Made by a program: the position numbers and the translations under genes. Under the pieces are notes generated by a model, which worked only from the letters and a program-made list of their open reading frames with translations, was not told the DNA's origin and searched no databases. From positions 372,001-436,000 of IMG/VR virus record IMGVR_UViG_3300035661_000001: a stretch of DNA of 64,000 bases. The stretch is one strand, 5' to 3'. Positions 2,526-38,615 of the stretch are shown piece by piece (position 1 is the first letter of the stretch; each line of letters begins with the position of its first letter).

Positions 2526-2846
2526 ATGAGTAGTATAAAATGTTTTATACATGATGACATAGTTAAATTATTTTTAGACATGAAAATTAATTCGCAGGGT
2601 AATATATTACCCTGCGACAACGCAGCAACCCAATCATTTGATTGGGTAGGCGAAGAAGATGAGATTTTTTGGTCTATAAAAATAAAAGATATTAATACAT
2701 CTCTTCTTTCATCATCTTTACTGACGCCTGATGAAAAATATGAAATAATACAATATTTTTCTAAACCTCGAAAATCTGAAGACACATTAAAAATTCTTAA
2801 TTTATCTATTTTTGATAGGTTAACTGAATTAAAAAGTTTTCTGTGA
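2526..2846 (+). CDS. Hypothetical protein with C-terminal LKSFL tail
   Basis: ORF track 2499..2846, likely start ATG 2526; ends LTELKSFL. Confidence 0.6.
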   Translation: MSSIKCFIHDDIVKLFLDMKINSQGNILPCDNAATQSFDWVGEEDEIFWSIKIKDINTSLLSSSLLTPDEKYEIIQYFSKPRKSEDTLKILNLSIFDRLTELKSFL

Positions 2847-3685
2847 ACTCATTCTACGAATATAAGTGTATTAATTTGATGACAATAATTAAATTAATAG
2901 AATATTCTAGTACTAGAAAATATAAAAAAAGAGATATTACATTGAAATGTGATGAATGTCATAAAATTTATGACTGTGAATCTAGATATAAAATAAGAGC
3001 CATAAAAAGTGAGCTTCATTTTTGTTCAAAAGATTGTTCTAAACAATCTTTTTCGTCCGGCAAGCTTAAACAAAAAGCTAATAAAAAATTAATTGAAAAA
3101 TATGGTTCTTTTTATGTACAAACAAGAGAGTTTAAAAAACAACAAAAAGAGCAGTGTCTTCAACAATATGGTGTTGAAAGCCGACTTGAAGCAAAAGAAA
3201 TTTTAGAAAAAATTAAACAAACTTGTTTAGAAAAATATGGTAAAGAAACTTTTGTAGGATCAGATGTTCATAAATCTAAATTAGATTATGATGCAATTGC
3301 ACAAAAAGCATGGAAAACTAAAATAAAAAATGGGACCTGTTCTAAATCAAAAATTGAAGAAAGGATAGCCCAGATTTTAGATTCAAACAATATTAAATAT
3401 GAAAGACAAGTTCCTAAGATAAAACAATGGATAGATTTTTATCTTATTTCTATGGATCTTTACATTCAAATAGATGGCGTCTATTGGCATGGTCTCAACA
3501 GACCAATAGAAATAATTGCTGAAGGCAATACATCGCAAGATAAAAAAATTTACAAACAAGTTTTACGAGATAATAAATTAAATCAGTATATGAAAAATAA
3601 TGGTTTAAATTTATTACGAATTACTGATGAGCAAATAAACAAAATGTCAGATGATGATGTTTTAAATTACATAAAGGAATTATAA
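2843..3685 (+). CDS. Putative homing endonuclease (EKYG repeats plus Vsr/DUF559-like nuclease)
   Basis: CxxC/FCS zinc motif, repeated C(L)EKYG units, C-terminal DFY...IQIDGVYWHG...RD. Confidence 0.7.
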   Translation: MNSFYEYKCINLMTIIKLIEYSSTRKYKKRDITLKCDECHKIYDCESRYKIRAIKSELHFCSKDCSKQSFSSGKLKQKANKKLIEKYGSFYVQTREFKKQQKEQCLQQYGVESRLEAKEILEKIKQTCLEKYGKETFVGSDVHKSKLDYDAIAQKAWKTKIKNGTCSKSKIEERIAQILDSNNIKYERQVPKIKQWIDFYLISMDLYIQIDGVYWHGLNRPIEIIAEGNTSQDKKIYKQVLRDNKLNQYMKNNGLNLLRITDEQINKMSDDDVLNYIKEL

Positions 3686-3687
3686 TT

Positions 3688-3996
3688 ATGCCTACTTATT
3701 TATATACTTGTCCTATTCATGGCAAATTTGAAGAAGAACATTCTATCAAAATTAAACTTGATTTTTGTTCTAAATGTACTGAAGAAGGAAAACTTGATGT
3801 ACCAGTGGAAAGATTGATTAATTGTGTTACTAAAGGCGTAGTTGAATTGTCAGGACAAGAATTGATTGCCAGGGCTAAACAAGAAGGAAAACAATTAGCT
3901 AAAGATGCTGCTAAAAGTGAAAAAATATATAGCAATTTACTTGGCGAAGGTCGTTACAACGATCTTCAAACTCGTATGGATCGTCGCAAACGATAA
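3688..3996 (+). CDS. FmdB-family zinc-ribbon protein
   Basis: MPTYLYTCPIHG...CSKC...RLI. Confidence 0.7.
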   Translation: MPTYLYTCPIHGKFEEEHSIKIKLDFCSKCTEEGKLDVPVERLINCVTKGVVELSGQELIARAKQEGKQLAKDAAKSEKIYSNLLGEGRYNDLQTRMDRRKR

Positions 3997-4084
3997 TTTA
4001 AAACAATTTTGCAGCGGATTGACATCGTAAAAACATAGATTATGTTAAGCGTACGATGTTTCGAGGAAATTTCGGAGATAAGAA

Positions 4085-4276
4085 ATGCCAACGTATCTTT
4101 ATTTATGTCCAGTTCATCACGAATTTGAATATGAACACTCTATTAAAGAAAAATTAGATGTTTGTCCAAAATGTGAAGAAGAAAAATTAGAAACTCAATC
4201 AGTAAAAAGATTGATTTCATCAGGTGGAAGTTTTATTTTAGTTGGGGGAAGCTGGGCTCGCGACAATTATAAATGA
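4085..4276 (+). CDS. FmdB-family zinc-ribbon protein (paralog)
   Basis: MPTYLYLCPVHH...CPKC...KRLISSGGSFILVGGSW..DNY. Confidence 0.75.
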   Translation: MPTYLYLCPVHHEFEYEHSIKEKLDVCPKCEEEKLETQSVKRLISSGGSFILVGGSWARDNYK

Positions 4277-4282
4277 AATTAA

Positions 4283-4423
4283 ATGACAAACAATAAGATT
4301 ATTAAAAAGAGTAATATAAAAAGAGTAATAGAGCTACTTAAATTTGTTCTAACATTAGATGATCCAGAACTAACTAAATCAACTGTAGAATCAGTTATTG
4401 AATTATTAGAAGAGACCAAATAA
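4283..4423 (+). CDS. Small hypothetical protein (46 aa, not in the ORF track)
   Basis: Manual translation MTNNKIIKKSNIKRVIELLKFVLTLDDPELTKSTVESVIELLEETK. Confidence 0.5.
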   Translation: MTNNKIIKKSNIKRVIELLKFVLTLDDPELTKSTVESVIELLEETK

Positions 4424-4499
4424 CAAATTAAATAGCTTTATCAATAATTAAGTATGTAACGTACGTTGTGTAGGTTTGCTGGGAAAATCGGAGATTATA

Positions 4500-5129
4500 A
4501 TGTTGCAAGAGAAAGAAGCTCAAGAATTAATTGTAAAATTTATTGAGCTCAGAGAAAAATCCAATGAATCCAAGATGCCAGCAGATATTGTTGAATTTAA
4601 AAAACATGAGAAGTTGTGTATTGAGAAATTTAAGTATTTAGTTACTATGAAAACTGGTAGATACAAATCATTTAGTAATTATGAAGATCTTAATCAAGAA
4701 GGTTTAGAAGCCTTAGTGAAGTCTATGAAAAACTACAATCCTAAAAAGGGGATTTTCTTTTACTGGGCACACAAGTATATTGATACTCGTATTTCACGAA
4801 GTGCTAATTTACACACAACGATTAGATATCCTTTAAGAGTAGCTAAGAACACTCCTCCTCATAAAGAAGCTATAATGCCTACTATGATTGAAGAGAGACA
4901 TTGCCCTGATAAAGAGTACGAAGAAGCTTTGACTGTTTCATCTATCGAATCAGCTATGGTTGCATTAACAAATGAACAAAAAGAAATTATTAGCCTAGCA
5001 TATGGAATCGATGGAGATAAGCCGATGTCAATTAATAAGATATGTAAAAAATTAAACATATCTAGAGTTAGTTGTTTGAAAACAATTAACAATTCATTGT
5101 TGTCGATGAAAAGTAATATTGCTGTATAA
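4500..5129 (+). CDS. Phage RNA polymerase sigma factor (sigma70 family)
   Basis: Region 2 EDLNQEGLEALVKSMKNYNPKKG.FFYWA; region 4 HTH LTNEQKEIISLAYG...SINKICKKLNISR. Confidence 0.85.
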   Translation: MLQEKEAQELIVKFIELREKSNESKMPADIVEFKKHEKLCIEKFKYLVTMKTGRYKSFSNYEDLNQEGLEALVKSMKNYNPKKGIFFYWAHKYIDTRISRSANLHTTIRYPLRVAKNTPPHKEAIMPTMIEERHCPDKEYEEALTVSSIESAMVALTNEQKEIISLAYGIDGDKPMSINKICKKLNISRVSCLKTINNSLLSMKSNIAV

Positions 5130-5165
5130 GTAGTTACACCGTTTATCTTTATAGGTTTTTTATAT

Positions 5166-6143
5166 ATGTCTTTATTTACGCCGAGACCCACGTATGCGCC
5201 ATTTGAATATCCAAAAGCCTATACATATTGGGAATTACAACAACAATCTCATTGGCTTCACCATGAGATATCATTAGCATCAGATATTAATGATTGGAAA
5301 ATAAATCTTTCCGAAACAGAAAAAAATGTCATAGGTCATATCCTAAAAGGATTTACCCAATCAGAAGTTTTCATCCAAGAATATTGGGGACAGATGGTTG
5401 GTAAATGGTTTAAAAAACCAGAAATTCAAATGATGGCTGCAACATTTTCTTCTATGGAATCCATTCACGCAGTAGCTTATGCTTACTTAAATCAATCTCT
5501 TGGTCTTGAAGATTTCGAAGCATTTTTACATGAACCAACAGCAAAAGCAAAAATTGACAGATTAATTACTACAAAAGGCAAATCCAAGGAAGAGATTGCT
5601 AAATCTTTAGCAATCTTTTCTGCCTTCAATGAAGGTGTTAATCTCTTCTCATCATTTGCTGTTCTATTGAATTTTTCCAGATTCAATAAATTAAAAGGTG
5701 TCGGACAAATCATTGCATTTTCAATCAAGGATGAGTCTTTACATTCAGAAGCAGGATGTTGGCTGTTCAGAGTGTTAATAGAAGAGTTTCCTGAAATATT
5801 CACTGACACTTTAAAAAAAGAGATTTATGATGCCGCAAGATTAACCGTAGAGTTAGAGGATGCTTTTATTGACAAAGCATTTGAACTCGGCACAATTGAA
5901 GGTATCACGCCTCAAGATCTTAAAGCATTCATTAGATTTAGAGCTAATACAAAATTAAATGATTTGGGTTTGAAAAAAGTTTGGAAAAATTTGGATAAAC
6001 AAGCCCTTGAAAGAATGGCATGGTTTGATGTAATGAGTGCTGGCGTATCACATGCCGACTTCTTTGCACAACGTGTCTCTGATTACGCAAAGGGGGCGAT
6101 TGACTTCTCTAACATTTGGGACGACGAGAGTACACATGAGTAA
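5166..6143 (+). CDS. nrdB: Ribonucleotide reductase class Ia beta subunit
   Basis: Di-iron ligands ESIH and DESLH, EGVNLFSSF, C-terminal DFF...Y. Confidence 0.95.
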   Translation: MSLFTPRPTYAPFEYPKAYTYWELQQQSHWLHHEISLASDINDWKINLSETEKNVIGHILKGFTQSEVFIQEYWGQMVGKWFKKPEIQMMAATFSSMESIHAVAYAYLNQSLGLEDFEAFLHEPTAKAKIDRLITTKGKSKEEIAKSLAIFSAFNEGVNLFSSFAVLLNFSRFNKLKGVGQIIAFSIKDESLHSEAGCWLFRVLIEEFPEIFTDTLKKEIYDAARLTVELEDAFIDKAFELGTIEGITPQDLKAFIRFRANTKLNDLGLKKVWKNLDKQALERMAWFDVMSAGVSHADFFAQRVSDYAKGAIDFSNIWDDESTHE

Positions 6144-7833: not shown

Positions 7834-7875
7834 TTAAAAATAATTAGTGTTGGTAATTAAAAGGTATTTGAATAC

Positions 7876-8247
7876 ATGCAAGGCACTATTCTTTTGAACT
7901 ATAATGAAAATGTTCATCATGTTGAGGAAGAGGAGAAAACCCGTTTTCTCAGGAATATACTTGAGCAAATGGGTCTTCCTATTCAAGAATTTTGGGCTGA
8001 CGATTCCCTATTAAATATTGAACAAAAAATCAAATTGCGTAATTTGATGACAACATATTCAATTCAGGTTATAGATGACCGTGATGGACATCTAGCTATT
8101 TTAGTTGAGGGGGAATTGGTTGGAGAATGGCACAAGTGCACATATAAATTACGACGTGACCCCGGTCAACTCGATCGCCGTAAACAATTATATCTAGAGA
8201 TGGAAGTAAATTGCTGGTCATTATTTGAGGAACAAACACAAGAATAA
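7876..8247 (+). CDS. Hypothetical protein
   Basis: 123-aa ORF in operon context. Confidence 0.65.
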   Translation: MQGTILLNYNENVHHVEEEEKTRFLRNILEQMGLPIQEFWADDSLLNIEQKIKLRNLMTTYSIQVIDDRDGHLAILVEGELVGEWHKCTYKLRRDPGQLDRRKQLYLEMEVNCWSLFEEQTQE

Positions 8248-12146: not shown

Positions 12147-12484
12147 ATGAAATATATTAAAAATAAGCCACTTAAAAAGAAGAAAAAGAAAGATTATCTA
12201 ATTGAAGATTGGTTTAGCGGCATAACTAAAGAAATTAAAAAACATTCTCAAGAAACAATGTTAGAATTTGATAGATTTATGCCGTGTAAAAAGAGGATAA
12301 ATTATCGATAGGTCTAGATAATGATACAATCATAGTAAAATCAAGATCTGTAGGATTTACAACTTTTAATCGCACGACAAGTTATTTGCCTTTACGAAGA
12401 TTAAATAAATATATTCTTTGTCATTCGGTAGAAGACTTCTGGTACAGGTGGAGCCGTTTTAAACGTTTGAAAGCATTTTTATGA
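12147..12484 (+). pseudogene. Frameshifted hypothetical gene ending RFKRLKAFL
   Basis: ATG 12147 frame stops near 12311; a different frame open from 12290 ends ...WSRFKRLKAFL*; one extra A in the A-run at 12288-12292 would fuse them. Confidence 0.45.
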
Positions 12485-22645: not shown

Positions 22646-23338
22646 ATGAAATCTTTTGCCTTTACCGATAACTTAGATCAATTGCTCGAAGGGGTTATAC
22701 ACAGCCTAACCGGCAACCAGCCCTCTTTGGACCCCAATGAATCTTATAAATTGCTGGAAGAGTCGCCCGGTGCTAGTACCAGTTCGTTCGGCAGCCAAGT
22801 TTTATCAAATGCTCAGGCGGATCTTGGGGTGCATGAGGATTTAGGCAAAAATGATGGTAAGAGAATTCGTGAATATTTCAAATATTTTAATATGGGCGGG
22901 GGACAAGATTGGTGCGCAGCCGCGGTATCGGCTTGGATGAAAGAAGCTGGTGGCGGACCAATACAAGGAGCAGTTGGCGCAAGAAATATAGCCGGACAAT
23001 TTGACCAGGCTGGTAAGTGGATTCCCAAAAACAAAATTACTCCACAGGTAATGATCCCAGGGAACATCGTCGTGTGGAGTAGAGGTGGACCTGACTCTTG
23101 GAAAGGTCATATTGGAGTTTTAGAATCTTTTGATGGTCGCGGAGGATTCACTTCTATTGAAGCTAATTCTGGACCTAAATCAGATTCAGTAGTGAGGAAT
23201 AGTCATTCTATTAGTGATGGTAATTTATTGGGAATAGGTATCTTATCAGGATATACTCCTACCTCCAAAATTGCAGCCGTCATTAGAATTGAAAATCTTA
23301 CAAATATATATTACCAAAATGCTTTAAGATTCAAATAA
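22646..23338 (+). CDS. CHAP-domain peptidoglycan hydrolase
   Basis: WCAAAVS (Cys), PGNIVVW, GHIG (His), IEAN. Confidence 0.8.
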   Translation: MKSFAFTDNLDQLLEGVIHSLTGNQPSLDPNESYKLLEESPGASTSSFGSQVLSNAQADLGVHEDLGKNDGKRIREYFKYFNMGGGQDWCAAAVSAWMKEAGGGPIQGAVGARNIAGQFDQAGKWIPKNKITPQVMIPGNIVVWSRGGPDSWKGHIGVLESFDGRGGFTSIEANSGPKSDSVVRNSHSISDGNLLGIGILSGYTPTSKIAAVIRIENLTNIYYQNALRFK

Positions 23339-23757
23339 CGATCCAACAGTTTTTGTAATTTTTTGTTTTGGTAATTTGTATAAAGAGATTCTTTCGGTAA
23401 CCAGGCACCGACCTCTAGCATATCCTCATTTGATATAACACTAATATCTCTTGTACAAATGATAACATTGAATTTTTTCAAAGCTTCAAATTCAATGTTA
23501 TCATTTTCAATGGCAAAATTAATCATTGGTTCTACATTAAATCCAAACCATTTTTCAAAATCTTTTTTATATATTTGAACTCCGGGAAGAGTAACTTTAT
23601 CAGTTGATAAAGCTGCTCTCTTGTATGATTTATTATTTGAATCCCATACACATCCAGTATTTAATATAGGGTGCTTATCATCATAAACAGAAAAGATTTT
23701 TTTATTCTTGATGTAGAACGTAAAACCATGTTTTACATTTATTTGAAATACTTTCAT
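23311..23757 (-). CDS. Hypothetical protein with KAFW tail
   Basis: 148 aa; ends RYLNLKAFW. Confidence 0.65.
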   Translation of the reverse strand: MKVFQINVKHGFTFYIKNKKIFSVYDDKHPILNTGCVWDSNNKSYKRAALSTDKVTLPGVQIYKKDFEKWFGFNVEPMINFAIENDNIEFEALKKFNVIICTRDISVISNEDMLEVGAWLPKESLYTNYQNKKLQKLLDRYLNLKAFW

Positions 23758-24431: not shown

Positions 24432-25463
24432 TTACACAATTACATCATGTGCATGAGATTCTCTCAGTCCTGCGCCCGTCATTCTCAAGAATTGCGGATT
24501 TGATTTTAAATCATTCAGATTATCTACGCCTTGATATGAACAACCAGATTTAATACCATCAATAATCTTAGTTAAAATCAAATTAAAACTCTCTTTAGCT
24601 GGGACTATTGAGACTACTCCCTCTATATGAGAGGTTTTATGGGTAGAGCTGCCTGCGTATTCTTTAAATCTTTTTCCGTTAATGCTTTTAATTTCTCCAG
24701 GTGTCTCTTCGCAGCCAGCAAAAATATTGCCTATCATCATCAAATTAGCAAAACATAATCCTTTGACACAATCTCCAGCAGATTTTGCCCCACCGTCTGA
24801 AATTAATAATAAATCACGAGTAACACCTTCGTCAAGCAATCTACGACGACCTTTATCAGCCTCTACTATAGAAGTAAATTGTGGTACACCATTGCCGGTT
24901 TCAATCCTAGTAAGACAAATACTACCACCACCAATACCATTTTTAACTATGTCAGCTCCGGCTTTCCATAATTCATAAGATCCGATATCAGTAGCTGTAT
25001 TACCAGCGATTAATAATATGTTAGGATAAGTTTTTGAAATCCATTCACACATTTCAATACACATAGCCGAATGACCATGTGCCACATCAATGCACAATAT
25101 TCTAGCCCCAAATGAAACTAATGTATCTATTATTTCAATATCTTCTTTTTTTACACCAACAGAAAATCCAATATGATTCCAAACATTTGATCCAAATTCT
25201 TCTTCTAAAGATTTGACAATATTTATTTGATCTTCTAATGGCATGAATCTGTGGACTATGCATAGTCCGCCAGACAAATAAATAGTTTTAGCCATATCAA
25301 AACCGATCAAAGATTTCATATTTGAAACTATAATCGGGTGTTTAAGAACTGTATCGAGTTTAGGTAACTTAACTGTTGTTTTTACTAAACTCCTCGATGG
25401 TATTTTACTGTATTTTGGCACAAGTAAAACATCATCAAAACATAAACCGTCATTTATAATCAT
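24432..25463 (-). CDS. IMP dehydrogenase / GMP reductase family (no CBS domains)
   Basis: FDDVLLVP, DVAHGH, AGN, GIGGGSICLTR (catalytic Cys), SDGG, SGCSYQG, ESHAH. Confidence 0.9.
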   Translation of the reverse strand: MIINDGLCFDDVLLVPKYSKIPSRSLVKTTVKLPKLDTVLKHPIIVSNMKSLIGFDMAKTIYLSGGLCIVHRFMPLEDQINIVKSLEEEFGSNVWNHIGFSVGVKKEDIEIIDTLVSFGARILCIDVAHGHSAMCIEMCEWISKTYPNILLIAGNTATDIGSYELWKAGADIVKNGIGGGSICLTRIETGNGVPQFTSIVEADKGRRRLLDEGVTRDLLLISDGGAKSAGDCVKGLCFANLMMIGNIFAGCEETPGEIKSINGKRFKEYAGSSTHKTSHIEGVVSIVPAKESFNLILTKIIDGIKSGCSYQGVDNLNDLKSNPQFLRMTGAGLRESHAHDVIV

Positions 25464-27205: not shown

Positions 27206-27451
27206 CTACCAAAAAGCCTTCATATTTATTCTTCTAATCATTTCATCTTCACTAAAATATATTTTAGTGAAGATGAAAGTAAAAAAAACATCAGGAATAG
27301 AATTATTATCACCAGTATAAAAGAACACTCTGATTTTTGGATACTTAAAATCATAAACAGTAATAACTCCCGCCTTATGAGTTTTATAATTATCTGATGA
27401 TAAGTCTACTAGAAATTCTTTAATTTTTGGGTGTAGATCATCTAGATTCAT
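27206..27451 (-). CDS. Hypothetical protein with KAFW tail
   Basis: Ends RRINMKAFW (TAG stop). Confidence 0.6.
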   Translation of the reverse strand: MNLDDLHPKIKEFLVDLSSDNYKTHKAGVITVYDFKYPKIRVFFYTGDNNSIPDVFFTFIFTKIYFSEDEMIRRINMKAFW

Positions 27452-27663
27452 TTATGCCTATAGGTGATTCTTCCACGTGACATATCGTATTCACTAACTT
27501 CACAGGTTACTTTATCACCTACTAAAATCTTTACGGAATTTACTCTAATTTTTCCGCTTAGAGTGCAAAGTACAATGACGGAGTCATTAACTTTTACTTT
27601 GAAATTGCCTTTGTTAGCATCTACAACAAAACCTTCAAACTCTAATCTATCTCTATTCGCCAT
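27448..27663 (-). CDS. infA: Translation initiation factor IF-1
   Basis: EG.V....FKV......LCTLSGKIR...VKILVGDKV..EVS.YD..RGRITYR. Confidence 0.93.
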   Translation of the reverse strand: MANRDRLEFEGFVVDANKGNFKVKVNDSVIVLCTLSGKIRVNSVKILVGDKVTCEVSEYDMSRGRITYRHK

Positions 27664-28980: not shown

Positions 28981-29277
28981 TCACCAAAACGCTTTCATAT
29001 TTAAAGATTTTTCTATTTTATTTACTATTATTTTCATTTCATCGACGTGTTTAATAATAGAAAGTTTCGCTTCTAGTTCATCAACTTTAGACAAATCATC
29101 TTTATGATCTGATAACTCAGATTTTAATTCCTCTGAAGCAGAAATCATTTCATTATAATCTCCAGCCATTTCTTTCATTTTTTCAGGATTACTGTAGATA
29201 TTAACTTCCATGTAACGACGAAATTGTCTAACTGTCTTCTCTATTTTCGCATAAGTATTTGGCTTATCTTTTTTCAT
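28981..29277 (-). CDS. Coiled-coil hypothetical protein with KAFW tail
   Basis: Ends KSLNMKAFW. Confidence 0.6.
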   Translation of the reverse strand: MKKDKPNTYAKIEKTVRQFRRYMEVNIYSNPEKMKEMAGDYNEMISASEELKSELSDHKDDLSKVDELEAKLSIIKHVDEMKIIVNKIEKSLNMKAFW

Positions 29278-29756
29278 CGAAAAATACTTTCCCGCATAAA
29301 TAAAGGTAACATTCCTTTATTTTTCATTTCTTCTTGTACTGTAGGAGATAAATAGTGAAAACCACTAATTAACTTCCTGCATTTTACAGAACCACAGTTA
29401 CATCTCATTTGCCAAATATCTACTGTGTCCGTAGAGCTAGTTGAATAATCAAATGTTAATTCAGAATCAGGAGCAATATCATACAAAGAATATAATATCG
29501 CCCTATTACCAGCAATAGATAAATAACAATTAGGATCACAACTATGATTTACATAATCATCTTTACCACCAGATGGTCCTATAAAAATATCAGGACCTAC
29601 TTGTAATGTGGTTGAACTATCTGGTAAATTACCACTGTTAAAAAAATCACCAGTCATCTCAATGATAGGTATATTTTTTTTAATCTTAACAGATGTAAAA
29701 ACGCCCTGACCACCTAGTCGGCTAGGCTTTAATTTAAGATAATCTTTAGAAATCAT
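29274..29756 (-). CDS. SET-domain protein-lysine methyltransferase with post-SET motif
   Basis: GQGVF, NHSCDPN, ELTFDY, CNCGSVKCR. Confidence 0.9.
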   Translation of the reverse strand: MISKDYLKLKPSRLGGQGVFTSVKIKKNIPIIEMTGDFFNSGNLPDSSTTLQVGPDIFIGPSGGKDDYVNHSCDPNCYLSIAGNRAILYSLYDIAPDSELTFDYSTSSTDTVDIWQMRCNCGSVKCRKLISGFHYLSPTVQEEMKNKGMLPLFMRESIFR

Positions 29757-32444: not shown

Positions 32445-32957
32445 TCAGATAAAAGCAGTTAATTTCCGGATGCCCTGTAGCCAACGAACAATATCTAATA
32501 CTGTGTCTATAGGTATTTTTTTACCAGTCTGAAATCCATTCCAGTGAATCACCCATTGACATTTAGAAAATCTATAATCTTTTATAGGATCTATTTTATT
32601 AAGCAATACCGCAGGGTTTCCTAAAGCAGTTTTATATTTTTCTTCATACAAAGTTAAATCCAACACTAAATCTTTCATTTGATTATCCGTGTATTCAGAT
32701 TTAATTATCTTTGCCACAAATTGACCAACTCTGATTCCTCCAGACTTAACAATAAAATCTTTCATTTTGTTCTTTTTAACATTTGTTAAATCACAGAATC
32801 CTCCGGCTTCTTTTAGTTTCATTTTTTGTTTGATTTCAGATTCCGCCGGAATCCAACTACCAGAAAAACTATCTGGTAAACTTTCTTCCTCTTGGGTATA
32901 TTGTTGATTAACAAGCCTTTGTATTAATTCAAAATATTCTTGGTTAGTCATTTTCAT
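32445..32957 (-). CDS. Hypothetical protein with KLTAFI tail
   Basis: 170 aa. Confidence 0.6.
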   Translation of the reverse strand: MKMTNQEYFELIQRLVNQQYTQEEESLPDSFSGSWIPAESEIKQKMKLKEAGGFCDLTNVKKNKMKDFIVKSGGIRVGQFVAKIIKSEYTDNQMKDLVLDLTLYEEKYKTALGNPAVLLNKIDPIKDYRFSKCQWVIHWNGFQTGKKIPIDTVLDIVRWLQGIRKLTAFI

Positions 32958-32998
32958 AATTAATTATATAACAATTTATAATAAATTCACATCATTCT

Positions 32999-33646
32999 AT
33001 GAATATCAATAGAGTAGTTAAATTAATCGACGTTTTTTATTCTCTAGCTTCTGAGAAGTTGCCGCCTGATTCTTCTAATTTAAAAACTATATTAAAGAAT
33101 ATAGAAAACCTTGAAACTTATCAGGCACGTATTAAATACGCAGAAGATAATTTAGACCATCTGTCCTCTGGATCATCTCGTATTGTTTATCAAGCACCAG
33201 ATAAAACTATTATTAAATTAGCCAAGAATGATAAAGGTATAGCTCAAAATAAAGCTGAAGCCAATCCTAAAATGAAATCTGATTTCCTAAACGAAATTAT
33301 TTCTAAAGATCAAAAAGGATATTGGATACAAACATATTTTTTGGATAAAATAAATGAAAAAGAATTCGAAAACTTAACTAAAATTTCTTTTGAAGATTTT
33401 AGTGAGGCATTGTCATTCGGAACTGATAAAAGTTCCAGCAAACAGCCTAAGAATTTTGATAAAGTATCAAAAACTCCTGTTTATAAAGAAATGAAAAGGC
33501 TTTGTGAGGATTTTGATCTGGTATCAGGAGATGTGACTAGGATTTCTTCCTGGGGAACTAAAGGTAATAAACCTATATTAATCGATGCAGGATTAACAGG
33601 AAAGATCTTCGAAGAATTTTACGAAGATGAAGATTCTTCCTCATAA
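32999..33646 (+). CDS. Protein-kinase-like fold protein
   Basis: SSGSSRIVY (Gly loop), IIKLA, QNKAE, GDV...SWG, LIDAG (DFG-like). Confidence 0.6.
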   Translation: MNINRVVKLIDVFYSLASEKLPPDSSNLKTILKNIENLETYQARIKYAEDNLDHLSSGSSRIVYQAPDKTIIKLAKNDKGIAQNKAEANPKMKSDFLNEIISKDQKGYWIQTYFLDKINEKEFENLTKISFEDFSEALSFGTDKSSSKQPKNFDKVSKTPVYKEMKRLCEDFDLVSGDVTRISSWGTKGNKPILIDAGLTGKIFEEFYEDEDSSS

Positions 33647-33729
33647 TAATTTTAAATATCGATCCATTGACATGCCGATTCCATGTGTTATCTTTAGGTG
33701 AAGATTTTTATAAGATCCACCTAAAGATT

Positions 33730-34338
33730 ATGATTTTTAAAACTATTAAGGATTTAATTGAACATAAATCAAATTGCACAATTTGCAATTCACCATTGCA
33801 CGCTTTTCTCAAAGAAAAAGCTAGGAATAAAGAAAGTATTCCCCAAAAAAGAATATGTTTAATTAATTCTAAATTCAAAAACCAACAATTTGAATTTAAA
33901 TTAGATTATTGTAGACATAATCTGGATATCCATTATCAAGCCATTCTTAATGATTCTAATCTATTAATTCTGGACCCACCTATTTTAGAAGAAAATGAAG
34001 TGGAATATGCTTTATCATTCCTAACAGATCTGTTTCTTAATATTGAATTACACTGTCTCAATAAAGAATGTAAACATAATTTTTATACCTTTACCTCAAT
34101 ATTAAAACCAAAATATAATTCAGATATTGGAGTATTTTTTCTTCCATTCTTTTTAGATTGGGAATGTTTTAACTTGAAACATTTATGGATTCAAAATGAT
34201 AACGTATCCCAATTAACAAAAATTTATAATACTAACTCTATTACAACACTTCCAATTACTATGCCTTTATTGCAAATAAGTTCCGATAACAAAGAAAAGA
34301 TATTCAACAGAATTAAAACTATTGTAAATTTTAGATAA
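33730..34338 (+). CDS. CxxC paralog family member 1
   Basis: CTIC..PL; ends RIKTIVNFR. Confidence 0.6.
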   Translation: MIFKTIKDLIEHKSNCTICNSPLHAFLKEKARNKESIPQKRICLINSKFKNQQFEFKLDYCRHNLDIHYQAILNDSNLLILDPPILEENEVEYALSFLTDLFLNIELHCLNKECKHNFYTFTSILKPKYNSDIGVFFLPFFLDWECFNLKHLWIQNDNVSQLTKIYNTNSITTLPITMPLLQISSDNKEKIFNRIKTIVNFR

Positions 34339-34342
34339 TAAT

Positions 34343-35041
34343 ATGTTAAAAGAATTTTTAAATTTTAATACTCATTGCCCATCTTGTAAAAACCCCCTTA
34401 CTTTATTCATGAGATGGTCCGGAGATATCATTGATAATGATTATCGTTTATTCAGGTTTCATCACAAACCAAATGAAAATATCGCATTTCGAGAAATTAA
34501 ACAAGATAATAAATATCCACAAAACTCTAAACACTCATTAGGTATAAACGGAATTATTTATCCAAATACTAATTCAATCACTTTCAATACTACCTCTGCA
34601 GAAAAGATAATTCAAAACCAAGATTCTATCTATTTCTTTTTTATATGTAATCCCAGCTCCATTGAATATCTTTCTAATGATTATGAAATCAATGTTTACG
34701 ATTCTTGTTATTTTAGATCATCTTTTCCAGTAAAATTTGTAAAAAATGATAATCGTCTATGTCCGACATATATAGAACCACCAGGTAATCATATAGCTAA
34801 TGAGCATTTTACTATCCTAGATAAAAAAGAAAATTCAGAAAAAGTATATGTTTTAACTGTATCTCATGAAGATAACAAAACATATTTAATGTATTACTCA
34901 GTTGACAACGAACAGACTTCAGACGAAGCTTTTACACCAAAAGTTTTTACCAAAGAACTTCCATTACTGAAAACTAGCCCTGACCCATCCGACAAAGACA
35001 AGTTACTGGAACGAATGAATTCCTGGATAATCATGAGTTGA
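34343..35041 (+). CDS. CxxC paralog family member 2
   Basis: CPSCKNPL; ends LPLL...RMNSWIIMS. Confidence 0.6.
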   Translation: MLKEFLNFNTHCPSCKNPLTLFMRWSGDIIDNDYRLFRFHHKPNENIAFREIKQDNKYPQNSKHSLGINGIIYPNTNSITFNTTSAEKIIQNQDSIYFFFICNPSSIEYLSNDYEINVYDSCYFRSSFPVKFVKNDNRLCPTYIEPPGNHIANEHFTILDKKENSEKVYVLTVSHEDNKTYLMYYSVDNEQTSDEAFTPKVFTKELPLLKTSPDPSDKDKLLERMNSWIIMS

Positions 35042-35193
35042 TTATACGCATTAGGCGCCGAAGTTGCAGACTTTTCTTTCTTAGGTAATGGCGTCAGAAA
35101 CTATGTAGAAGCTGTTTGGATTCATTTTAGAGAAGAATTAGACAGAAGAAAAATAGATACAGAATTTTTCTGTGATCTAGAAATATAAATTTT

Positions 35194-36282
35194 ATGAATA
35201 TCCCGCAAATAATCGCCTCAAGCGATGATAAACTTTCATCGCTTTTTAATATGATTCCTATTCATATTCATGAAAATAGGGTAAAAGAAATAGATCATCA
35301 GGTCAGTTCCCCGGAACTCTGGAGAAATCCACAAAAAGCCGCCGTTCTTATGAAAGAAAGACAAAAACTTTCAGAACTAATATCTTTCTTATCAACCGCC
35401 AAATCTAAATTGGAATTCTATAAAGAATGTTTATCTTCCATTCCAGATGAATTAATAGGAATAGAAGACCAAATAATGAGTTTATACTCCGCTATCTCCA
35501 ACTTGGAGTTTAAACAAATGTTATCCGATCCACTCGACGATTCTCCAGCAATAATTTCTATCAACGCTGGCGCTGGAGGATTAGAAGCCGCTAATTGGAC
35601 TACCATGCTTTTTAGAATGTATTCCAGATATGCCGCCGCTAATGACTTAAAAATAGAACTCCTTGACATGAAACCCTCAGAAGAACACTCTTCTATCTGT
35701 ACAGACTCCGTCTCTATTCGTATCGAAGGTCCCTATGCTTATGGCTTTCTTAAATCAGAAATAGGCGTTCATCGATTAATTCGTAACTCTCCATTTAACG
35801 CTAATGATGCCAGACATACCTCATTCGCCGCCGTGACTGTTCTCCCAGATATAGAAGATCAAATAGATATTCAAATAAATGAAAAGGATATCGAAATTAC
35901 TACAATGCGATCCTCTGGCGCTGGTGGACAAAATGTTAATAAAGTAGAGTCAGCTGTTAGATTAAAACATATTCCAACCGGTCTAGTTATCAATTCTAGA
36001 TCAGAACGAGACCAACATACCAATAGAAAAATTGCTCTCAAAATTTTAAAAGCTAAACTTTATGAATTAGAAGTGAATAAGAAAAATGCCGAAAAAGAGA
36101 AGTTCTTCAACTCTATGCAGGATAACTCCTTCGGACATCAAATAAGGTCATATATTCTATTCCCATCCCAAATGGTAAAAGATCATCGCTCCGAATATGA
36201 AACTAAATCTGCTACACAAGTTCTAGATGGCGATTTAACTCCATTTATTAACGCTTTTCTACATTCAAATGTTAACCGTTAA
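35194..36282 (+). CDS. prfB: Peptide chain release factor 2
   Basis: GAGG.EA..W..ML.RMY, SPF specificity tripeptide, [26 protein letters not shown]; no internal frameshift. Confidence 0.93.
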
Positions 36283-36838
36283 AGATTTCATTGGATACAA
36301 CAATCCATGCTTCTTCTGCAAAACACCAATAGATCTGAAGATTAGATCTACTAATGCATCAAATGATCGATCTATCTCTATCAAACCGGACCTATCATCG
36401 GAAATATTAGATCTTGCTTTAAAAGTTACCTATGTGGGCACTCTTAATTTAAAAATAAATCACACCCACAACAGATTTAATTCAAATAATTTTAAAGACT
36501 TGACAGCATATTTAAAAGATTATAAGCTCTCTATGAGCCTTCGCTGCAATAAATGTGGCACTACCATAAAAAGCAAAAATTTACAATTTGATCTAGTTAA
36601 CCAAATTATCAAACCACTAGAAATATCTAGCGAAGTTCTCAACGTTATAGGTAAAGGTACTTTTTATTCTTTAGTCTCCAATTTCCAAAAGAATATATCT
36701 ATCCTGTCCGCAACTCCTATGCAACTAGGTAAAAATAATTATACCACTATACTAGATCTCCCACTGCAACCACTATCAAAATTCGATAGTCCAGAACATT
36801 TCATAAAGAAAATGAAAACCCTTCTTCTATTTATATGA
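36269..36838 (+). CDS. CxxC paralog family member 3
   Basis: CFFCKTP; ends KMKTLLLFI. Confidence 0.6.
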
Positions 36839-37176
36839 TATACGAAAATTGCCCAATCTGTTCAAAAACATTATCAAAACAATCAGAAACTTTAAACCCA
36901 GGTTTAATAAGCTGCGAGTCATTCTGCGAAAAAGAAAAAGACCACTCCTTCTTCTCAAGATGGTTTAATGAAGAACCCAATCAAACGCAAATAATTAAAA
37001 TTGCTTTCAAAGGTGACTCCAAAATATTTTTGAAACTCAATTACCAATTACAAAAAAGTTTTATCTGGACAAAACCAAATGACGTACATCCCATTAAAGT
37101 ATCATTGTTTGAACCAGATTTCTCTGATATCCCAAAACTTAAAAAGAAACTCAAAACCCTTCTTCTATTCATATAA
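36835..37176 (+). CDS. CxxC paralog family member 4
   Basis: CPIC; ends PDFSDIPKLKKKLKTLLLFI. Confidence 0.65.
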   Translation: MIYENCPICSKTLSKQSETLNPGLISCESFCEKEKDHSFFSRWFNEEPNQTQIIKIAFKGDSKIFLKLNYQLQKSFIWTKPNDVHPIKVSLFEPDFSDIPKLKKKLKTLLLFI

Positions 37177-37178
37177 AT

Positions 37179-37532
37179 ATGAAAATCCCATCCGATTGCC
37201 CTATCTGTCATCAATTCCTGTTAAATAAATACATACAAGATGCCAACCAAATCGATGTCCTAAAGAAGAAATGCTTCCGCTCTCCCACCCATAATATAGA
37301 ATATACCTCCCTCCCAAATCAGGACGATTCCCTTAAATCTATCACTCTCACCACCTTCAATAAACTAGAAATCTCCCATTTCAAATGGGACTTCCAATTA
37401 AAAGAATTCACAATCCGTTTCCCCAAAGGAAACTTTACCCAAGAGATAAAACATCTCCCATTCTTTATTCCCAATTTATCTAATCTCCCAACCCTAATAT
37501 CAAAAATTAAGAAATACTTAATTTTCTCATGA
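37179..37532 (+). CDS. CxxC paralog family member 5
   Basis: CPIC; ends PNLSNLPTLISKIKKYLIFS. Confidence 0.65.
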   Translation: MKIPSDCPICHQFLLNKYIQDANQIDVLKKKCFRSPTHNIEYTSLPNQDDSLKSITLTTFNKLEISHFKWDFQLKEFTIRFPKGNFTQEIKHLPFFIPNLSNLPTLISKIKKYLIFS

Positions 37533-37545
37533 CATATGATAATGC

Positions 37546-37875
37546 ATGAAGCTACCCAAATTTTGCCCAATCTGTAATAATAGATTAAAAAAAGATGTCA
37601 ACCCACAAATAAACTCTAGCAAAATCTGCTGCGCTAAATCCCCAGGACACTATCTCGGATACCTATTTGACGAAAAATCTCAGCTCACTCACGTCTTCCT
37701 TACCCTAGACAATTACTCAAGCATCGAACTACGAACAATCCATAACGAAACAATCTTCTATTATAACCCCAAATCTAACCTGGATTTTCTCGTCATACCC
37801 AAACTCCTAATTCCCGATTTCCCATCCCTCAGTAAACTAAAACAAAAACTATCCATCCTAAGGGTGTTTATCTAA
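37546..37875 (+). CDS. CxxC paralog family member 6
   Basis: CPIC; ends PDFPSLSKLKQKLSILRVFI. Confidence 0.65.
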   Translation: MKLPKFCPICNNRLKKDVNPQINSSKICCAKSPGHYLGYLFDEKSQLTHVFLTLDNYSSIELRTIHNETIFYYNPKSNLDFLVIPKLLIPDFPSLSKLKQKLSILRVFI

Positions 37876-37898
37876 CCCACCCATCAAGAGGTCTACCC

Positions 37899-38264
37899 TT
37901 GAATTGCCCCTCCCTAAATTGCCCGTTCTGTAACAATCCACTGCAATTTAAACTCGATAATTATAAATTTGTAAGACAAAACTACTCCCAACCATATTCC
38001 TGTACAAAATGTCCAGGAAAACCTACCTTCGCCCTACTCTTCCAACAAGATAAAATCCCCCAAGCTATTGATATCTTCCTGCCCGCCAAATATAAAAAAC
38101 AACGCTATTATATTCACCAAAATTATATAGCCAAATCTACCACCATCTTAAAAAATAACTACCCCAAATCTATCATCATAACCTCTCTCCCTATCCTAGA
38201 TATCTCCCCTAATACATCCCAACATACCCTATATAGAATTCTAAGCAACAAAGCCTTCCTATGA
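37899..38264 (+). CDS. CxxC paralog family member 7
   Basis: CPFC..PL, CTKC; ends RILSNKAFL. Confidence 0.6.
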   Translation: MNCPSLNCPFCNNPLQFKLDNYKFVRQNYSQPYSCTKCPGKPTFALLFQQDKIPQAIDIFLPAKYKKQRYYIHQNYIAKSTTILKNNYPKSIIITSLPILDISPNTSQHTLYRILSNKAFL

Positions 38265-38615
38265 CTCCAAATTGCATTTTTTTTGCTCTTCTATCCTAGA
38301 AATTACCGAATTATCAAAAAACTCTTCCGTTGCACATTGCCCCCAATGTATGAAAATAGAAGAATATTATATTTCTTATTACCTAGAAACTAATAAAAAA
38401 ATTGACACATGCATGGTTTATCACTCAGACAAAAGTATAAAATACTCTGTCGCCCTAGACCTAAAACTATACACTATCATCATCACTACCTGGGAAGCAA
38501 ATGCCCTAGTCGATGCTATCTATTTCCCCTCCCACTATTCAATTCCCTATTCCACCTAATGGAAATCGCCGGACAATTTGCCCAGCGATTCAATAAAATT
38601 AAAGCTTTCCTTTAA
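38261..38615 (+). pseudogene. CxxC paralog family member 8, split by two frameshifts
   Basis: ATG 38261 MTPNCIF, a T8 run, then frame 38272 CSSILE..CPQC, then frame 38409 ending RFNKIKAFL. Confidence 0.5.

What the first reader, a model, noticed from the sequence alone, without database searches (positions are those of the whole stretch)
2526..38615. About 14 small proteins share a C-terminal basic-hydrophobic tail (K-A-F-W/L/I and variants)
Seen: LTELKSFL (2846), RFKRLKAFL (12484), YLNLKAFW (23311), RINMKAFW (27206), SLNMKAFW (28981), IRKLTAFI (32445), [62 protein letters not shown] and FNKIKAFL. Nearly all have F as the penultimate residue after a basic amphipathic helix. Outside the CxxC family the protein bodies look unrelated, and the genes lie on both strands. 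Known analogies are the C-terminal clamp-binding peptides of T4 gp33/gp55/gp43 and C-terminal degrons. Inference: a shared docking, targeting or degradation tag, for example adaptors that plug into one phage or host hub protein.
Basis: partly seen in the sequence, partly recalled or inferred. Interest (0 to 1): 0.72.

Follow-up and report, generated by a model that had tools for sequence, protein, structure and literature searches.

The report
Shared C-terminal helix tag in megaphage proteins
Dozens of small, fast-evolving proteins of a ~450-kb environmental phage and its relatives end in the same short helix (basic, hydrophobic, then Phe and one last residue); it is real and kept by selection, and probably plugs them all into one still unidentified partner.

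Summary
All 14 tails exist; two belong to frameshifted genes. In the whole 452-kb phage genome about 35 small proteins carry the tail. A strict pattern ([KR][LIMV]xx[LMY]xxFx-end) hits 19 of 488 genes against 0.05 expected, 0 of 910 non-coding-frame ORFs and 0 of 241 flank genes. A complete 481-kb relative gives 30 of 702 against 0.09 expected. Selection acts on the protein: synonymous change is normal in the tail, and orthologs keep tails better than bodies (84% vs 65%; 54% vs 33%).

Eight window genes belong to an undescribed family (216 cluster representatives, no Pfam or PHROG): zinc ribbon, beta meander, C-terminal helix, consensus LPFFEPDFSDYxKLIxKIKTYLxFS. It lies in tandem arrays of up to about 20 genes around a phage RF2 gene in ~450-490-kb megaphages. 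The same helix end (…LNLKAF[WL]) also sits on proteins with no detectable similarity to that family.

Best reading, inferred: a constant docking or targeting helix on variable bodies. The partner is unknown. No clamp gene was found; the one complex prediction, against the phage ClpP/ClpR pair, gave no answer. The main rival is a purely structural helix of one very divergent superfamily.

The parts
2499..2846 (+). 115-aa protein without CxxC; tail ...DRLTELKSFL
   Evidence: no Pfam or PHROG match
12147..12484 (+). Frameshifted gene. The N-terminal part is 12147-12311. The C-terminal part lies in another frame and ends ...RFKRLKAFL at 12484.
   Evidence: Both pieces align to the intact 116-aa ortholog L005:19469-19819, where the motif lies 5 residues from the end (...KKLKAFYENTI)
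23311..23757 (-). 148-aa protein; tail ...YTNYQNKKLQKLLDRYLNLKAFW
   Evidence: Homologs at 76%, 62% and 35% identity keep the last ~22 residues almost unchanged. The AF2 model is poor (pLDDT 55).
27206..27451 (-). 81-aa protein; tail ...RRINMKAFW; TAG stop
   Evidence: the ortholog L005:6294-6539 ends RINMKIFW
28981..29277 (-). 98-aa protein that looks helical from its sequence (not modelled); tail ...KSLNMKAFW
   Evidence: the ortholog L005:4164-4460 ends SLNMKVFW, and an extra paralog at L005:4463-4759 ends ...SVKVFW
32445..32957 (-). 170-aa protein inside the array region, on the opposite strand; tail ...VRWLQGIRKLTAFI
   Evidence: Orthologs in four relatives end RKLTAFI, KKMSAFL, IRMKAFL and KKLSAFL
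33667..34338 (+). Two-domain CxxC family member; tail ...FNRIKTIVNFR. The true start is probably the ATG near 33733.
   Evidence: The family HMM matches twice; the 201-aa ortholog in L014 ends FNRIQTIVNFK
34343..35041 (+). Two-domain CxxC family member; degenerate tail ...LLERMNSWIIMS (M at position -2)
   Evidence: Family HMM E = 0.001 with two domains; orthologs end LNSWIIMS and LNGWILMS
35194..36282 (+). Phage release factor 2 (SPF and GGQ motifs) embedded in the array. It is not a tail protein. Its position is conserved in all relatives examined.
   Evidence: synteny
36269..36838 (+). 189-aa CxxC family member; tail ...[13 protein letters not shown]
36835..37176 (+). 113-aa CxxC family member; tail ...DFSDIPKLKKKLKTLLLFI
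   Evidence: Family HMM E = 8e-26; alignment
37179..37532 (+). 117-aa CxxC family member; tail ...NLSNLPTLISKIKKYLIFS. This is the protein that was modelled.
   Evidence: Family HMM E = 1e-28. AF2 pLDDT 93.8: zinc ribbon, seven strands, then helix 103-116.
37546..37875 (+). 109-aa CxxC family member; tail ...SLSKLKQKLSILRVFI
37899..38264 (+). 121-aa CxxC family member; tail ...YRILSNKAFL, the KAF-type ending on a CxxC body
   Evidence: Family HMM E = 5e-7. No counterpart at this place in L014.
38272..38615 (+). Frameshifted CxxC family member (frames 38272-38559 and 38409-38615); tail ...RFNKIKAFL
   Evidence: Both pieces align to the intact 123-aa ortholog L014:17190-17561, which ends RFNKVKTFL

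Best explanation
The tails are one conserved protein module: a C-terminal amphipathic helix of about 12-25 residues that ends hydrophobic-Phe-x-COOH. The family consensus is LP[FYW]FEPD[FL]S[DN]YxKL[IK]xK[IL]KTY[LI]xFS. A variant ends ...[RK]xxN[LM]KAF[WL].

The module is the hallmark of a large, very fast-evolving gene family arranged in tandem arrays: an N-terminal Cys-Cys-Cys-His zinc ribbon, a seven-strand beta meander, and the C-terminal helix. The family is found in a clade of ~450-490-kb environmental megaphages. The same helix end also occurs on proteins whose bodies show no similarity to that family.

Most likely mechanism (inferred, not shown): the helix is a constant docking or targeting element that binds one conserved partner. 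It needs its Phe exactly one residue from the free carboxyl end. The variable bodies supply many different specificities. The proteins would then be either adaptors that bring different targets to one machine, or cargo taken to one place.

The partner is not identified. Candidates, each with a low individual probability:
- the phage's own proteolytic set: an active ClpP, an inactive ClpR-like paralog, and a core classical AAA+ ATPase whose own C-terminus is a conserved ...KYFK;
- the prohead interior, by analogy with the T4 capsid-targeting sequence;
- a host hub.
For: Shown:
1. Position-specific enrichment at the C-terminus. G000 has 19 hits against 0.05 expected, with none in shadow ORFs. 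G002 has 30 hits against 0.09 expected.
2. Selection at the protein level. Synonymous differences at conserved residues are 33% in tails and 36% in bodies.
3. Orthologs keep tails better than bodies: 84% vs 65% and 54% vs 33%. The 148-aa protein keeps its last 12 residues even in the 35%-identity homolog.
4. Tail proteins are the fastest-evolving class. Only 32% have a BLAST homolog in G002, at a median identity of 29%. For other small proteins the figures are 50% and 54%.
5. In 150 family representatives clustered at 50% identity or less, position -2 is F in 145 and L or I in the other 5. None has a C-terminal extension or a register shift.
6. Outside the zinc ligands, the best-conserved residues of the family are polar or charged helix residues plus the Phe: K at -9 in 142 of 145, K at -7, T at -6, F at -2.
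7. Bodies with and without CxxC show no BLAST or profile similarity. Yet both tail flavours occur on CxxC bodies, for example ...ERILNLKAFL and ...KRFLNLKIFS in L015 and L016.

Known precedent for the logic: the T4 internal proteins are diverse and share only a short capsid-targeting peptide, MKTYQEFIAE (PMC3012670, PMC8442874).
Against: - No partner has been found. The only complex prediction (ClpR x2, ClpP x2, the AAA+ C-terminus, and the 81-aa KAFW protein) gave 'no answer'.
- In the CxxC family AF2 models the tail as a confident helix within one compact, high-confidence domain (pLDDT 93-97 over the last blocks). It could therefore be a core structural element rather than a free tag.
- Conservation of a C-terminal helix within a family is expected from common descent alone.
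- Bacillus phage G has an analogous zinc-ribbon expansion with its own, different conserved C-terminal helix.
- The AF2 model of a non-CxxC tail protein was too poor to show whether its tail is exposed.
Confidence: 0.45

Rival explanations
1. The helix is purely structural. All tail-bearing proteins descend from one zinc-ribbon/beta-meander/helix ancestor, some after losing or replacing the N-terminal part. The helix is simply the slowest-evolving core element that covers the sheet, and there is no common partner.
For: - AF2 gives a confident helix within one compact, confident domain.
- The family HMM recognises about 13 genes in this genome, including two-domain forms.
- Many other tail proteins have CxxC pairs.
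- The phage G zinc-ribbon expansion has the same architecture with another helix sequence.
- Tandem arrays with 4-nt overlaps favour fusions that keep the 3' end.
Against: - The best-conserved helix residues are polar or charged (K at -9, K at -7, T at -6, S at -1).
- There is no C-terminal extension in 150 of 150 divergent representatives.
- The tail also occurs on a 98-aa protein that looks helical from its sequence, and on 81-, 148- and 170-aa bodies with no profile similarity to the family.
Confidence: 0.25
2. The tail is a C-terminal degron. It marks a whole class of (early or accessory) phage proteins for timed removal by an ATP-dependent protease, either host ClpXP or Lon, or the phage's own AAA+ ATPase with ClpP/ClpR.
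For: - The motif is strictly anchored to the free C-terminus.
- The sequence is basic then hydrophobic, as in known C-terminal ClpX signals (from memory: MuA ends ...RRKKAI).
- The phage encodes an active ClpP, a ClpR-like paralog with Ser replaced by Asp and His by Asn, and a conserved classical AAA+ ATPase. All are kept in complete relatives.
Against: - The motif is predicted as a structured helix, whereas degrons are usually disordered.
- No Clp-type ATPase is encoded; the only AAA_2 match is MoxR-like.
- The complex prediction gave no answer.
- There are no expression or stability data.
Confidence: 0.15
3. The tail binds a sliding clamp, as the C-termini of T4 gp43, gp33 and gp55 do.
For: T4 gp43 ends ...KASLDFLFG, which is hydrophobic-F-x at the C-terminus, and gp55 carries SLDFLY near its end. 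The core x-L-x-hydrophobic-F also resembles the bacterial clamp-binding motif QLxLF (from memory).
Against: - No match in the phage genome to DNA_pol3_beta, gp45-slide_C, DNA_PPF or DNA_pol3_delta2.
- The T4 tails are acidic and extended. These are basic and helical.
- There is no obvious reason for 35-50 different clamp binders.
Confidence: 0.04
4. The tail is a membrane-targeting amphipathic helix, like the C-terminal helices of MinD or FtsA.
For: It is a short basic and hydrophobic helix at the C-terminus.
Against: - The register relative to the C-terminus and the position-specific polar residues are more exact than lipid binding should require.
- The helix is modelled as part of a compact, high-confidence domain in the CxxC family.
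- Hydrophobic content is modest in the KAF[WL] variant.
Confidence: 0.05
5. The pattern is a nucleotide-level or compositional artefact: AT-rich codons, a signal for translational coupling to the next gene, or a terminator.
For: - Many array genes overlap the next start by ATGA. In G002 the ending TTC-TCA-TGA is the commonest (10 of 43 tail genes). This can explain part of the preference for Ser at the last position.
- TGA stops are somewhat enriched: 18 of 31 tail genes against 113 of 318 other small genes.
Against: - 0 of 910 shadow ORFs carry the motif.
- Synonymous sites in the tail are as variable as elsewhere.
- The tail occurs on both strands and before intergenic regions.
- The motif is conserved from 32% to 42% GC genomes.
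Confidence: 0.02

Closest known systems
[quoted passage not shown]
   Same: A short terminal peptide is the only thing shared by diverse, hypervariable small phage proteins (PMC3012670). The T4 CTS is MKTYQEFIAE (PMC8442874). It shares K-T-Y-Q-x-F with tails such as ...KLKTYQVFK (genome 129839-130273) and the family consensus KTY[LI]xF.
   Different: The T4 CTS is N-terminal and is cut off by the prohead protease. Here the motif is C-terminal and ends the protein. No gp23-type capsid protein or gp21-type protease Pfam match was found (though the controls for those models were also silent). The six-residue likeness may be chance.
Lineage-specific expansion of small zinc-ribbon proteins in Bacillus phage G (about 35 copies; Iyer et al. 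2021, PMC7824862)
   Same: A ~500-kb phage carries arrays of ~100-120-aa proteins with an N-terminal CPxC zinc ribbon and a conserved C-terminal helix (gp32, gp34, gp35, gp37, gp46). There is a weak fold match to phage G gp166. The function is unknown; the authors suggested transcription factors or structural DNA-binding proteins.
   Different: The C-terminal motif is different (...YWKENDRYLAKxLSK, no Phe at -2). There is no BLAST similarity: tblastn of a consensus-like family member against 50,697 phage records found nothing. In phage G the tail is not known to occur on unrelated bodies.
Clamp-binding C-termini of T4 gp43, gp55 and gp33
   Same: A C-terminal hydrophobic peptide lets several unrelated proteins dock on one ring. 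gp43 ends ...SLDFLFG, with F at position -2.
   Different: The T4 tails are acidic, short and extended, and only three or four proteins carry them. No clamp or clamp-loader gene was detected here.
HbYX motifs (hydrophobic-Tyr-x-COOH) of proteasome activators, and C-terminal helix motifs read by AAA+ N-domains (Vps4 MIT-MIM1)
   Same: An aromatic residue is penultimate, the last side chain is free to vary, and a free carboxylate is required. The clade's core classical AAA+ ATPase itself ends ...KYFK (68 of 115 full-length homologs). The spacing L-x-x-[KR]-[LI]-x-x-[YL] resembles MIM1, (D/E)xxLxxRLxxL(K/R) (recalled from memory).
   Different: The penultimate residue is Phe, not Tyr. No proteasome-type peptidase is encoded. 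The AAA+ N-domain has no detectable similarity to MIT or to any solved domain. Nothing was tested biochemically.
Viral adaptor families with a constant C-terminal docking domain (poxvirus ankyrin/PRANC F-box-like proteins)
   Same: These are large, rapidly diversifying families in tandem arrays with a variable body and a constant C-terminal element. This is the logic of the adaptor model (from general knowledge).
   Different: There is no sequence or fold relation. No ubiquitin system is involved. The docking function is hypothetical here.

Membership tests
Unnamed megaphage family 'zinc ribbon, beta meander, C-terminal KTYLxFS helix' (defined here by profiles A2 and A3) | Full-length profile match | tested here: met
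   hmmsearch with the 149-sequence profile, window coordinates. Clear matches: 37179 (1e-28), 36835 (8e-26), 37546 (6e-16), 37899 (5e-7), 34343 (1e-3). Borderline: 38272 (0.04) and 33667 (0.07). The 189-aa gene at 36269 was matched only by the tail HMM (0.06); it is assigned by its CxxC pairs, its tail and its position in the array. The KAFW trio, 32445 and 2499 were not matched.
Unnamed megaphage family 'zinc ribbon, beta meander, C-terminal KTYLxFS helix' (defined here by profiles A2 and A3) | Four zinc ligands (C-x2-C ... C-x5-H) | tested here: met
   In A3, C7 and C10 are invariant, and C32 and H38 are conserved in at least 90% of sequences. These residues are present in the window members.
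Unnamed megaphage family 'zinc ribbon, beta meander, C-terminal KTYLxFS helix' (defined here by profiles A2 and A3) | C-terminal helix ending hydrophobic-F-x-COOH, with K at position -9 | tested here: met
   145 of 150 representatives have F at -2, and 142 of 145 have K at -9. All window members qualify except 34343-35041, which has M at -2.
T4-type clamp-binding tails | A phage-encoded gp45-type clamp (or beta clamp) and a clamp loader are present | tested here: not met
   No match to PF09116, PF02916, PF00712 or PF13177 in the complete genome. Divergent clamps could escape these models, and the host clamp was not testable.
T4-type clamp-binding tails | Motif S/T-L-D-F-L-[FY] near the C-terminus in an acidic context | tested here: not met
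   T4 gp43 ends ...EEKASLDFLFG and gp55 ...SPSLDFLYEAND. Here the context is basic and helical, and the only shared feature is hydrophobic-F-x at the end.
T4 capsid-targeting sequence | N-terminal location and removal by the prohead protease after Glu | tested here: not met
   The motif is C-terminal and is followed by the stop codon. No PF03420 or PF07068 match was found, but those searches had silent controls.
T4 capsid-targeting sequence | The proteins are packaged in the virion | not testable with these tools
   This needs virion proteomics.
HbYX docking motif | Hydrophobic-Tyr-x at the free C-terminus | tested here: inconclusive
   The pattern is hydrophobic-Phe-x, Phe rather than Tyr. 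The last residue varies and the register is strict.
HbYX docking motif | A 20S or HslV-type peptidase ring as receptor | tested here: not met
   No PF00227 match in the phage. A ClpP/ClpR pair exists instead, but docking could not be evaluated.
C-terminal degron of an ATP-dependent protease | The tail shortens protein half-life in a protease-dependent way | not testable with these tools
   The host is unknown and there are no stability data.
Bacillus phage G zinc-ribbon expansion | Sequence or profile similarity, including the C-terminal motif YWKENDRYLAK | tested here: not met
   tblastn of a consensus-like member against all phage records found no match. The phage G tails differ. Only the architecture is shared, plus a weak fold hit (TM 0.36-0.38).

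The most novel reading that the evidence does not exclude
The megaphage clade runs its own targeted-proteolysis or targeting system. A phage-encoded machine accepts the hydrophobic-Phe-x-COOH helix as a universal plug. One candidate machine is the core classical AAA+ ATPase with its conserved ...KYFK end, together with the ClpP/ClpR ring. The 35-50 rapidly diversifying tail proteins per genome would be interchangeable adaptors, each aimed at a different host protein such as a defence factor. This would be a bacterial-virus counterpart of the F-box, PRANC and BTB adaptor families of eukaryotic viruses.
Probability: 0.1. Interest if true: 0.9.

Novelty: new variant of a known kind. Interest (0 to 1): 0.66.

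Why it matters
Giant phages carry hundreds of small genes of unknown function. Here 5-7% of the genes of a widespread clade of ~450-490-kb environmental phages are tied together by one short terminal module under selection. That gives a single experimental handle on dozens of orphan proteins: use the tail as bait, or delete it.

If the tail is a plug for a phage-encoded machine or compartment, it would reveal a new organising principle of megaphage infection, and a portable targeting tag. If it is only structural, it still defines a large new protein family with a predicted fold that found no convincing match among solved or AFDB structures, and a clear case of extreme diversification around a fixed helix.

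Tried and rejected
- **Pfam and PHROGs** on 10 window tail proteins and 10 consensus-like family members: nothing above threshold.
- **Word-indexed homolog search** with the 113-aa CxxC protein: found only itself. The exhaustive profile search was needed to find the family.
- **Fold searches** of the confident model: no convincing match in PDB, AFDB clusters or the ESM Atlas. BFVD returned only paralogs from one uncultured phage. The feature search in the Atlas was uninformative.
- **AF2 of the 148-aa KAFW protein** with a 4-sequence alignment: pLDDT 55, unusable.
- **Complex prediction** with ClpR x2, ClpP x2, the AAA+ C-terminal 54 residues and the 81-aa KAFW protein: no answer. The chains were folded without alignments and the partner had pLDDT below 50. 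This counts neither for nor against binding.
- **Hub hunting by Pfam** in the genome. Not found: beta clamp, gp45, clamp loader, proteasome, and T4 gp23 or gp21. The AAA_2 match is only MoxR-like.
- **AAA+ N-domain profile against PDB sequences:** nothing significant.
- **Stop-codon recoding** as an explanation of the C-termini: the AT-rich part is 94.7% coding under code 11, and no alternative code improves it clearly. Rejected for this region.
- **Sigma-70 promoter scan** to place the arrays in an expression class: no enrichment over shuffles.
- **Isoelectric point** of tail proteins against other small proteins: no difference.
- **Literature:** no paper describing this motif or family was found.

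Full report
**What the window is.** The window is bases 372,001-436,000 of a 451,956-bp virus record. IMG/VR classes it as complete, with direct terminal repeats. The contig ends repeat about 250 bp that carry two tRNA-Arg genes.

Window positions 1 to about 39,500 belong to a ~336-kb zone of 32% GC. This zone is densely coding (94.7% under code 11) and phage-like. It encodes DnaB, an HNH endonuclease, class I ribonucleotide reductase, PhoH, GMP reductase, Thy1, dUTPase, a CHAP domain protein, a SET domain protein and an IF1-like protein. After about 39,500 the GC content jumps to 57-60%.

**Check of the observation.** All 14 tails are present. Twelve end intact ORFs. Two end genes that are frameshifted in this assembly:
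- 12147-12484 ends ...RFKRLKAFL. Its two pieces align to an intact 116-aa ortholog.
- 38272-38615 ends ...RFNKIKAFL. Its two pieces align to an intact 123-aa CxxC ortholog.

The three KAFW tails use GCA, GCT and GCG for Ala, AAA or AAG for Lys, and TAA, TAG and TGA as stops.

**Statistics.** I built a greedy gene set for the whole genome.
- Phe is at position -2 in 51 of 488 genes of the AT-rich zone. The background frequency of Phe is 4.5%.
- Inspection showed about 35 small proteins ending [KR]-[LI]-x-x-L-[LK]-hydrophobic-F-x, spread over genome positions 120-210 kb and 358-411 kb.
- Position -9 was not used for selection, yet it is K or R in 28 of the 35.
- The strict pattern [KR][LIMV]xx[LMY]xxFx hits 19 gene C-termini. 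It hits only 11 internal positions out of 101,883, so 0.05 C-terminal hits are expected (P about 1e-42).
- The same pattern hits 0 of 910 ORFs in non-coding frames and 0 of 241 genes in the other compositional zones. Tails shuffled within the last 60 residues give a mean of 0.13 hits and a maximum of 3.

The AT-rich-coding explanation is therefore rejected.

**Relatives keep the tail.**
- The 148-aa KAFW protein has homologs at 76%, 62% and 35% identity. Their last ~22 residues are nearly invariant.
- A related 111-kb contig (loci L005 and L014) is syntenic with the window. Every ortholog keeps its tail. Tail identity is 84% against 65% for the bodies (P = 7e-6).
- At conserved residues, synonymous codon differences are as frequent in the tail (33%) as in the body (36%). 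The constraint is on the protein, not on the DNA or RNA.
- A complete 481-kb relative, G002 (42% GC), was fetched whole. The strict pattern hits 30 of 702 genes against 0.09 expected (P = 3e-65). About 43-50 genes carry a tail, including seven more ...KAFW ends.
- Between the two genomes tails are 54% identical and bodies 33% (P = 5e-6).
- Tail proteins are the fastest-evolving class. Only 32% have any BLAST homolog in G002, at a median identity of 29%. Other small proteins reach 50% and 54%; large proteins reach 78% and 51%.

**The CxxC family.**
- A profile of eight CxxC members found 216 cluster representatives (E <= 1e-3) among 1.84 billion proteins. All are about 100-130 aa and match end to end.
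- Their N-termini read MKxPxxCPxC...KxC...H.
- Their C-termini read LP[FYW]FEPD[FL]S[DN]YxKL[IK]xK[IL]KTY[LI]xFS.
- Position -2 is F in 145 of 150 and L or I in the other five. None has a longer or shorter end.
- K at -9 is present in 142 of 145. Apart from the zinc ligands, it and F at -2 are the only nearly invariant residues.
- The family has no Pfam or PHROG model. It has no match in 50,697 deposited phage genomes.
- With the 149-sequence alignment, AlphaFold2 gives a confident model (pLDDT 93.8, pTM 0.85). It shows a zinc ribbon, a seven-strand meander and a helix at residues 103-116.
- The model found no convincing match in PDB, AFDB clusters or the ESM Atlas. In BFVD it matched only a series of paralogs from one uncultured phage.
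- In this genome the family HMM finds about 13 members. Three of them are two-domain forms of 190-235 aa.

**Genomic setting.**
- In four relatives of 32-42% GC the same arrangement recurs: tail genes, a phage RF2 gene, then a tandem array of tail genes that ends at a trypsin-like lipoprotein peptidase.
- The array has about 6 genes in this phage and about 20 in the 467-, 480- and 481-kb relatives.
- Many genes overlap by ATGA.
- The host contigs of family members and of the clade's core AAA+ gene are repeatedly 460-491 kb long. This is a widespread megaphage clade.

**One motif or two.**
- The KAF[WL] ending and the KTYLxFS ending are variants of one module. CxxC-family proteins in relatives end ...ERILNLKAFL...KRFLNLKIFS and ...DKILNLKVFS, and window gene 37899-38264 ends ...ILSNKAFL.
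- The non-CxxC carriers (2499, 23311, 27206, 28981, 32445, and others elsewhere in the genome) show no BLAST similarity to each other or to the family once the last 15 residues are removed.
- The profile-profile probability between the CxxC family and the KAFW-148 family is 0.1.
- The AF2 model of the 148-aa protein was too poor to compare folds.

**What it most likely does.**

Shown: this is a C-terminal helix module under purifying selection, in exact register with the carboxyl end, on very fast-evolving bodies that are partly unrelated.

Inferred: it is a constant interaction element for one conserved partner. The reasoning is as follows.
- The most conserved positions include polar and charged residues (K at -13, K at -9, K at -7, T at -6, S at -1).
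- By helical geometry, K(-9), T(-6) and F(-2) lie on one ridge beside the hydrophobic face formed by -12, -8, -5, -4 and -1.
- No lineage tolerates an extension after the Phe-x end.
- The bodies turn over quickly while the tail does not.

The same logic is known for the T4 internal proteins, which share only their capsid-targeting peptide (PMC3012670). That peptide, MKTYQEFIAE (PMC8442874), happens to share K-T-Y-Q-x-F with these tails.

**Search for the partner.**
- The phage has no detectable beta clamp, gp45-type clamp, clamp loader, proteasome or Clp-type ATPase.
- It does have a tandem ClpP pair. By eye, the first copy lacks the catalytic Ser and His (ClpR-like), and the second keeps Ser, His and Asp.
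- It has a 438-aa classical AAA+ ATPase of the Cdc48/VAT/YjoB type. This is a core gene of the clade: more than 462 clusters, with the N-domain 61-87% identical. Its C-terminus is conserved as ...DKYFK, which is again hydrophobic-Phe-x.
- The ClpR/ClpP pair and the AAA+ gene are syntenic in two further complete or large relatives.
- The single complex prediction allowed (ClpR x2, ClpP x2, the AAA+ C-terminus, and the 81-aa KAFW protein) returned 'no answer'. It is not evidence either way.
- The AAA+ N-domain resembles no solved domain by sequence.

The partner therefore remains unknown.

- T4 gp43 ends ...KASLDFLFG and gp55 carries SLDFLY four residues from its end. The hydrophobic-F-x ending is shared with gp43. 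The acidic, extended context and the clamp itself are not.
- Bacillus phage G has a reported expansion of about 35 zinc-ribbon proteins (PMC7824862). I read several of them (gp32, 34, 35, 37, 46). They have the same architecture (CPxC near the N-terminus, conserved C-terminal helix) but another motif...YWKENDRYLAKxLSK. This shows that giant phages repeatedly expand zinc-ribbon proteins with a lineage-specific constant C-terminal helix. It fits both a lineage-specific partner and plain common descent.

**Verdict.**
- A purely structural helix is the main rival (about 0.25).
- The family and the cross-family tail are undescribed as far as Pfam, PHROGs, PDB, deposited phage genomes and the searched literature show.

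Noticed in passing
window 39,300-64,000 (genome 411.5-440 kb); also L014:18,000-20,396 and G002:420-480 kb: GC content jumps from 32% to 57-60% right after the array and the trypsin-like gene. The genome also has a third zone of about 44% GC at 1-75 kb. Two relatives show the same jump, so it is not an assembly chimera. Under code 11 the GC-rich zone has only short, Arg-rich ORFs, and treating TGA as a sense codon lengthens them. IMG/VR trimmed a near-identical copy to 349 kb as a 'provirus'.
   Followed up: partly
window 36,300-39,400: The + strand has an extreme excess of C over G (GC skew -0.4 to -0.77; G is only 7-10% of bases). The skew covers both the + strand CxxC genes and the - strand trypsin-like gene, so it is not a codon effect. 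It is weaker in L014 and almost absent in L015, L016 and G002.
   Followed up: partly
window 35194-36282; genome 80,119-80,195: The phage encodes a release factor 2 (SPF and GGQ motifs) inside the array, and elsewhere an amber-suppressor-like tRNA (anticodon CTA) among about 41 tRNAs. That combination has been linked to TAG recoding in other phages. No clear sign of recoding was seen in the AT-rich zone.
   Followed up: partly
genome 217,479-218,653 (L009:17479-18653) and 226,052-227,368 (L010:6052-7368): A tandem ClpR-like gene (Ser replaced by Asp, His by Asn) and an active ClpP gene lie next to a DksA-type zinc-finger gene. About 7 kb downstream is a core classical AAA+ ATPase whose C-terminus ...DKYFK is conserved in most of 115 homologs. 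The block is syntenic in 481- and 486-kb relatives.
   Followed up: partly
window 32999-33646 (+): A 215-aa protein of unknown function is divergently transcribed from the LTAFI gene. It is conserved at this place in all four relatives and has an acidic, aromatic C-terminus (...EEFYEDEDSSS, ...AEYYESSSSS).
   Followed up: no
window 38612-39337 (-): A trypsin-like peptidase (Trypsin_2) with a lipoprotein-type signal peptide closes the array in every relative examined. In L016 a C39 peptidase gene lies next to it.
   Followed up: no
window 27448-27663 (-), 29274-29756 (-), 24432-25463 (-): An IF1/eIF-1A-like S1-fold protein (annotated on the L005 ortholog), a SET-domain protein and a GMP reductase/IMPDH-family enzyme lie among the KAFW genes. 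This is an unusual auxiliary set for a phage.
   Followed up: no
window 12296-12311 and about 38,530-38,559: Two genes are split by single frameshifts relative to intact orthologs in a related contig. These are either pseudogenes or assembly errors in homopolymer runs. At 12,47x the difference from the relative is one extra T in a T-run, which also moves the stop so that the tail ends exactly ...KAFL.
   Followed up: yes
genome 186,224-187,330 and 181,114-182,763 (L003): A MoxR-like AAA+ ATPase lies near a DUF2201 metallopeptidase/VWA protein, a thioredoxin, two Fe-S assembly (IscA-like) proteins and a polynucleotide kinase-phosphatase. They are interspersed with tail genes.
   Followed up: no
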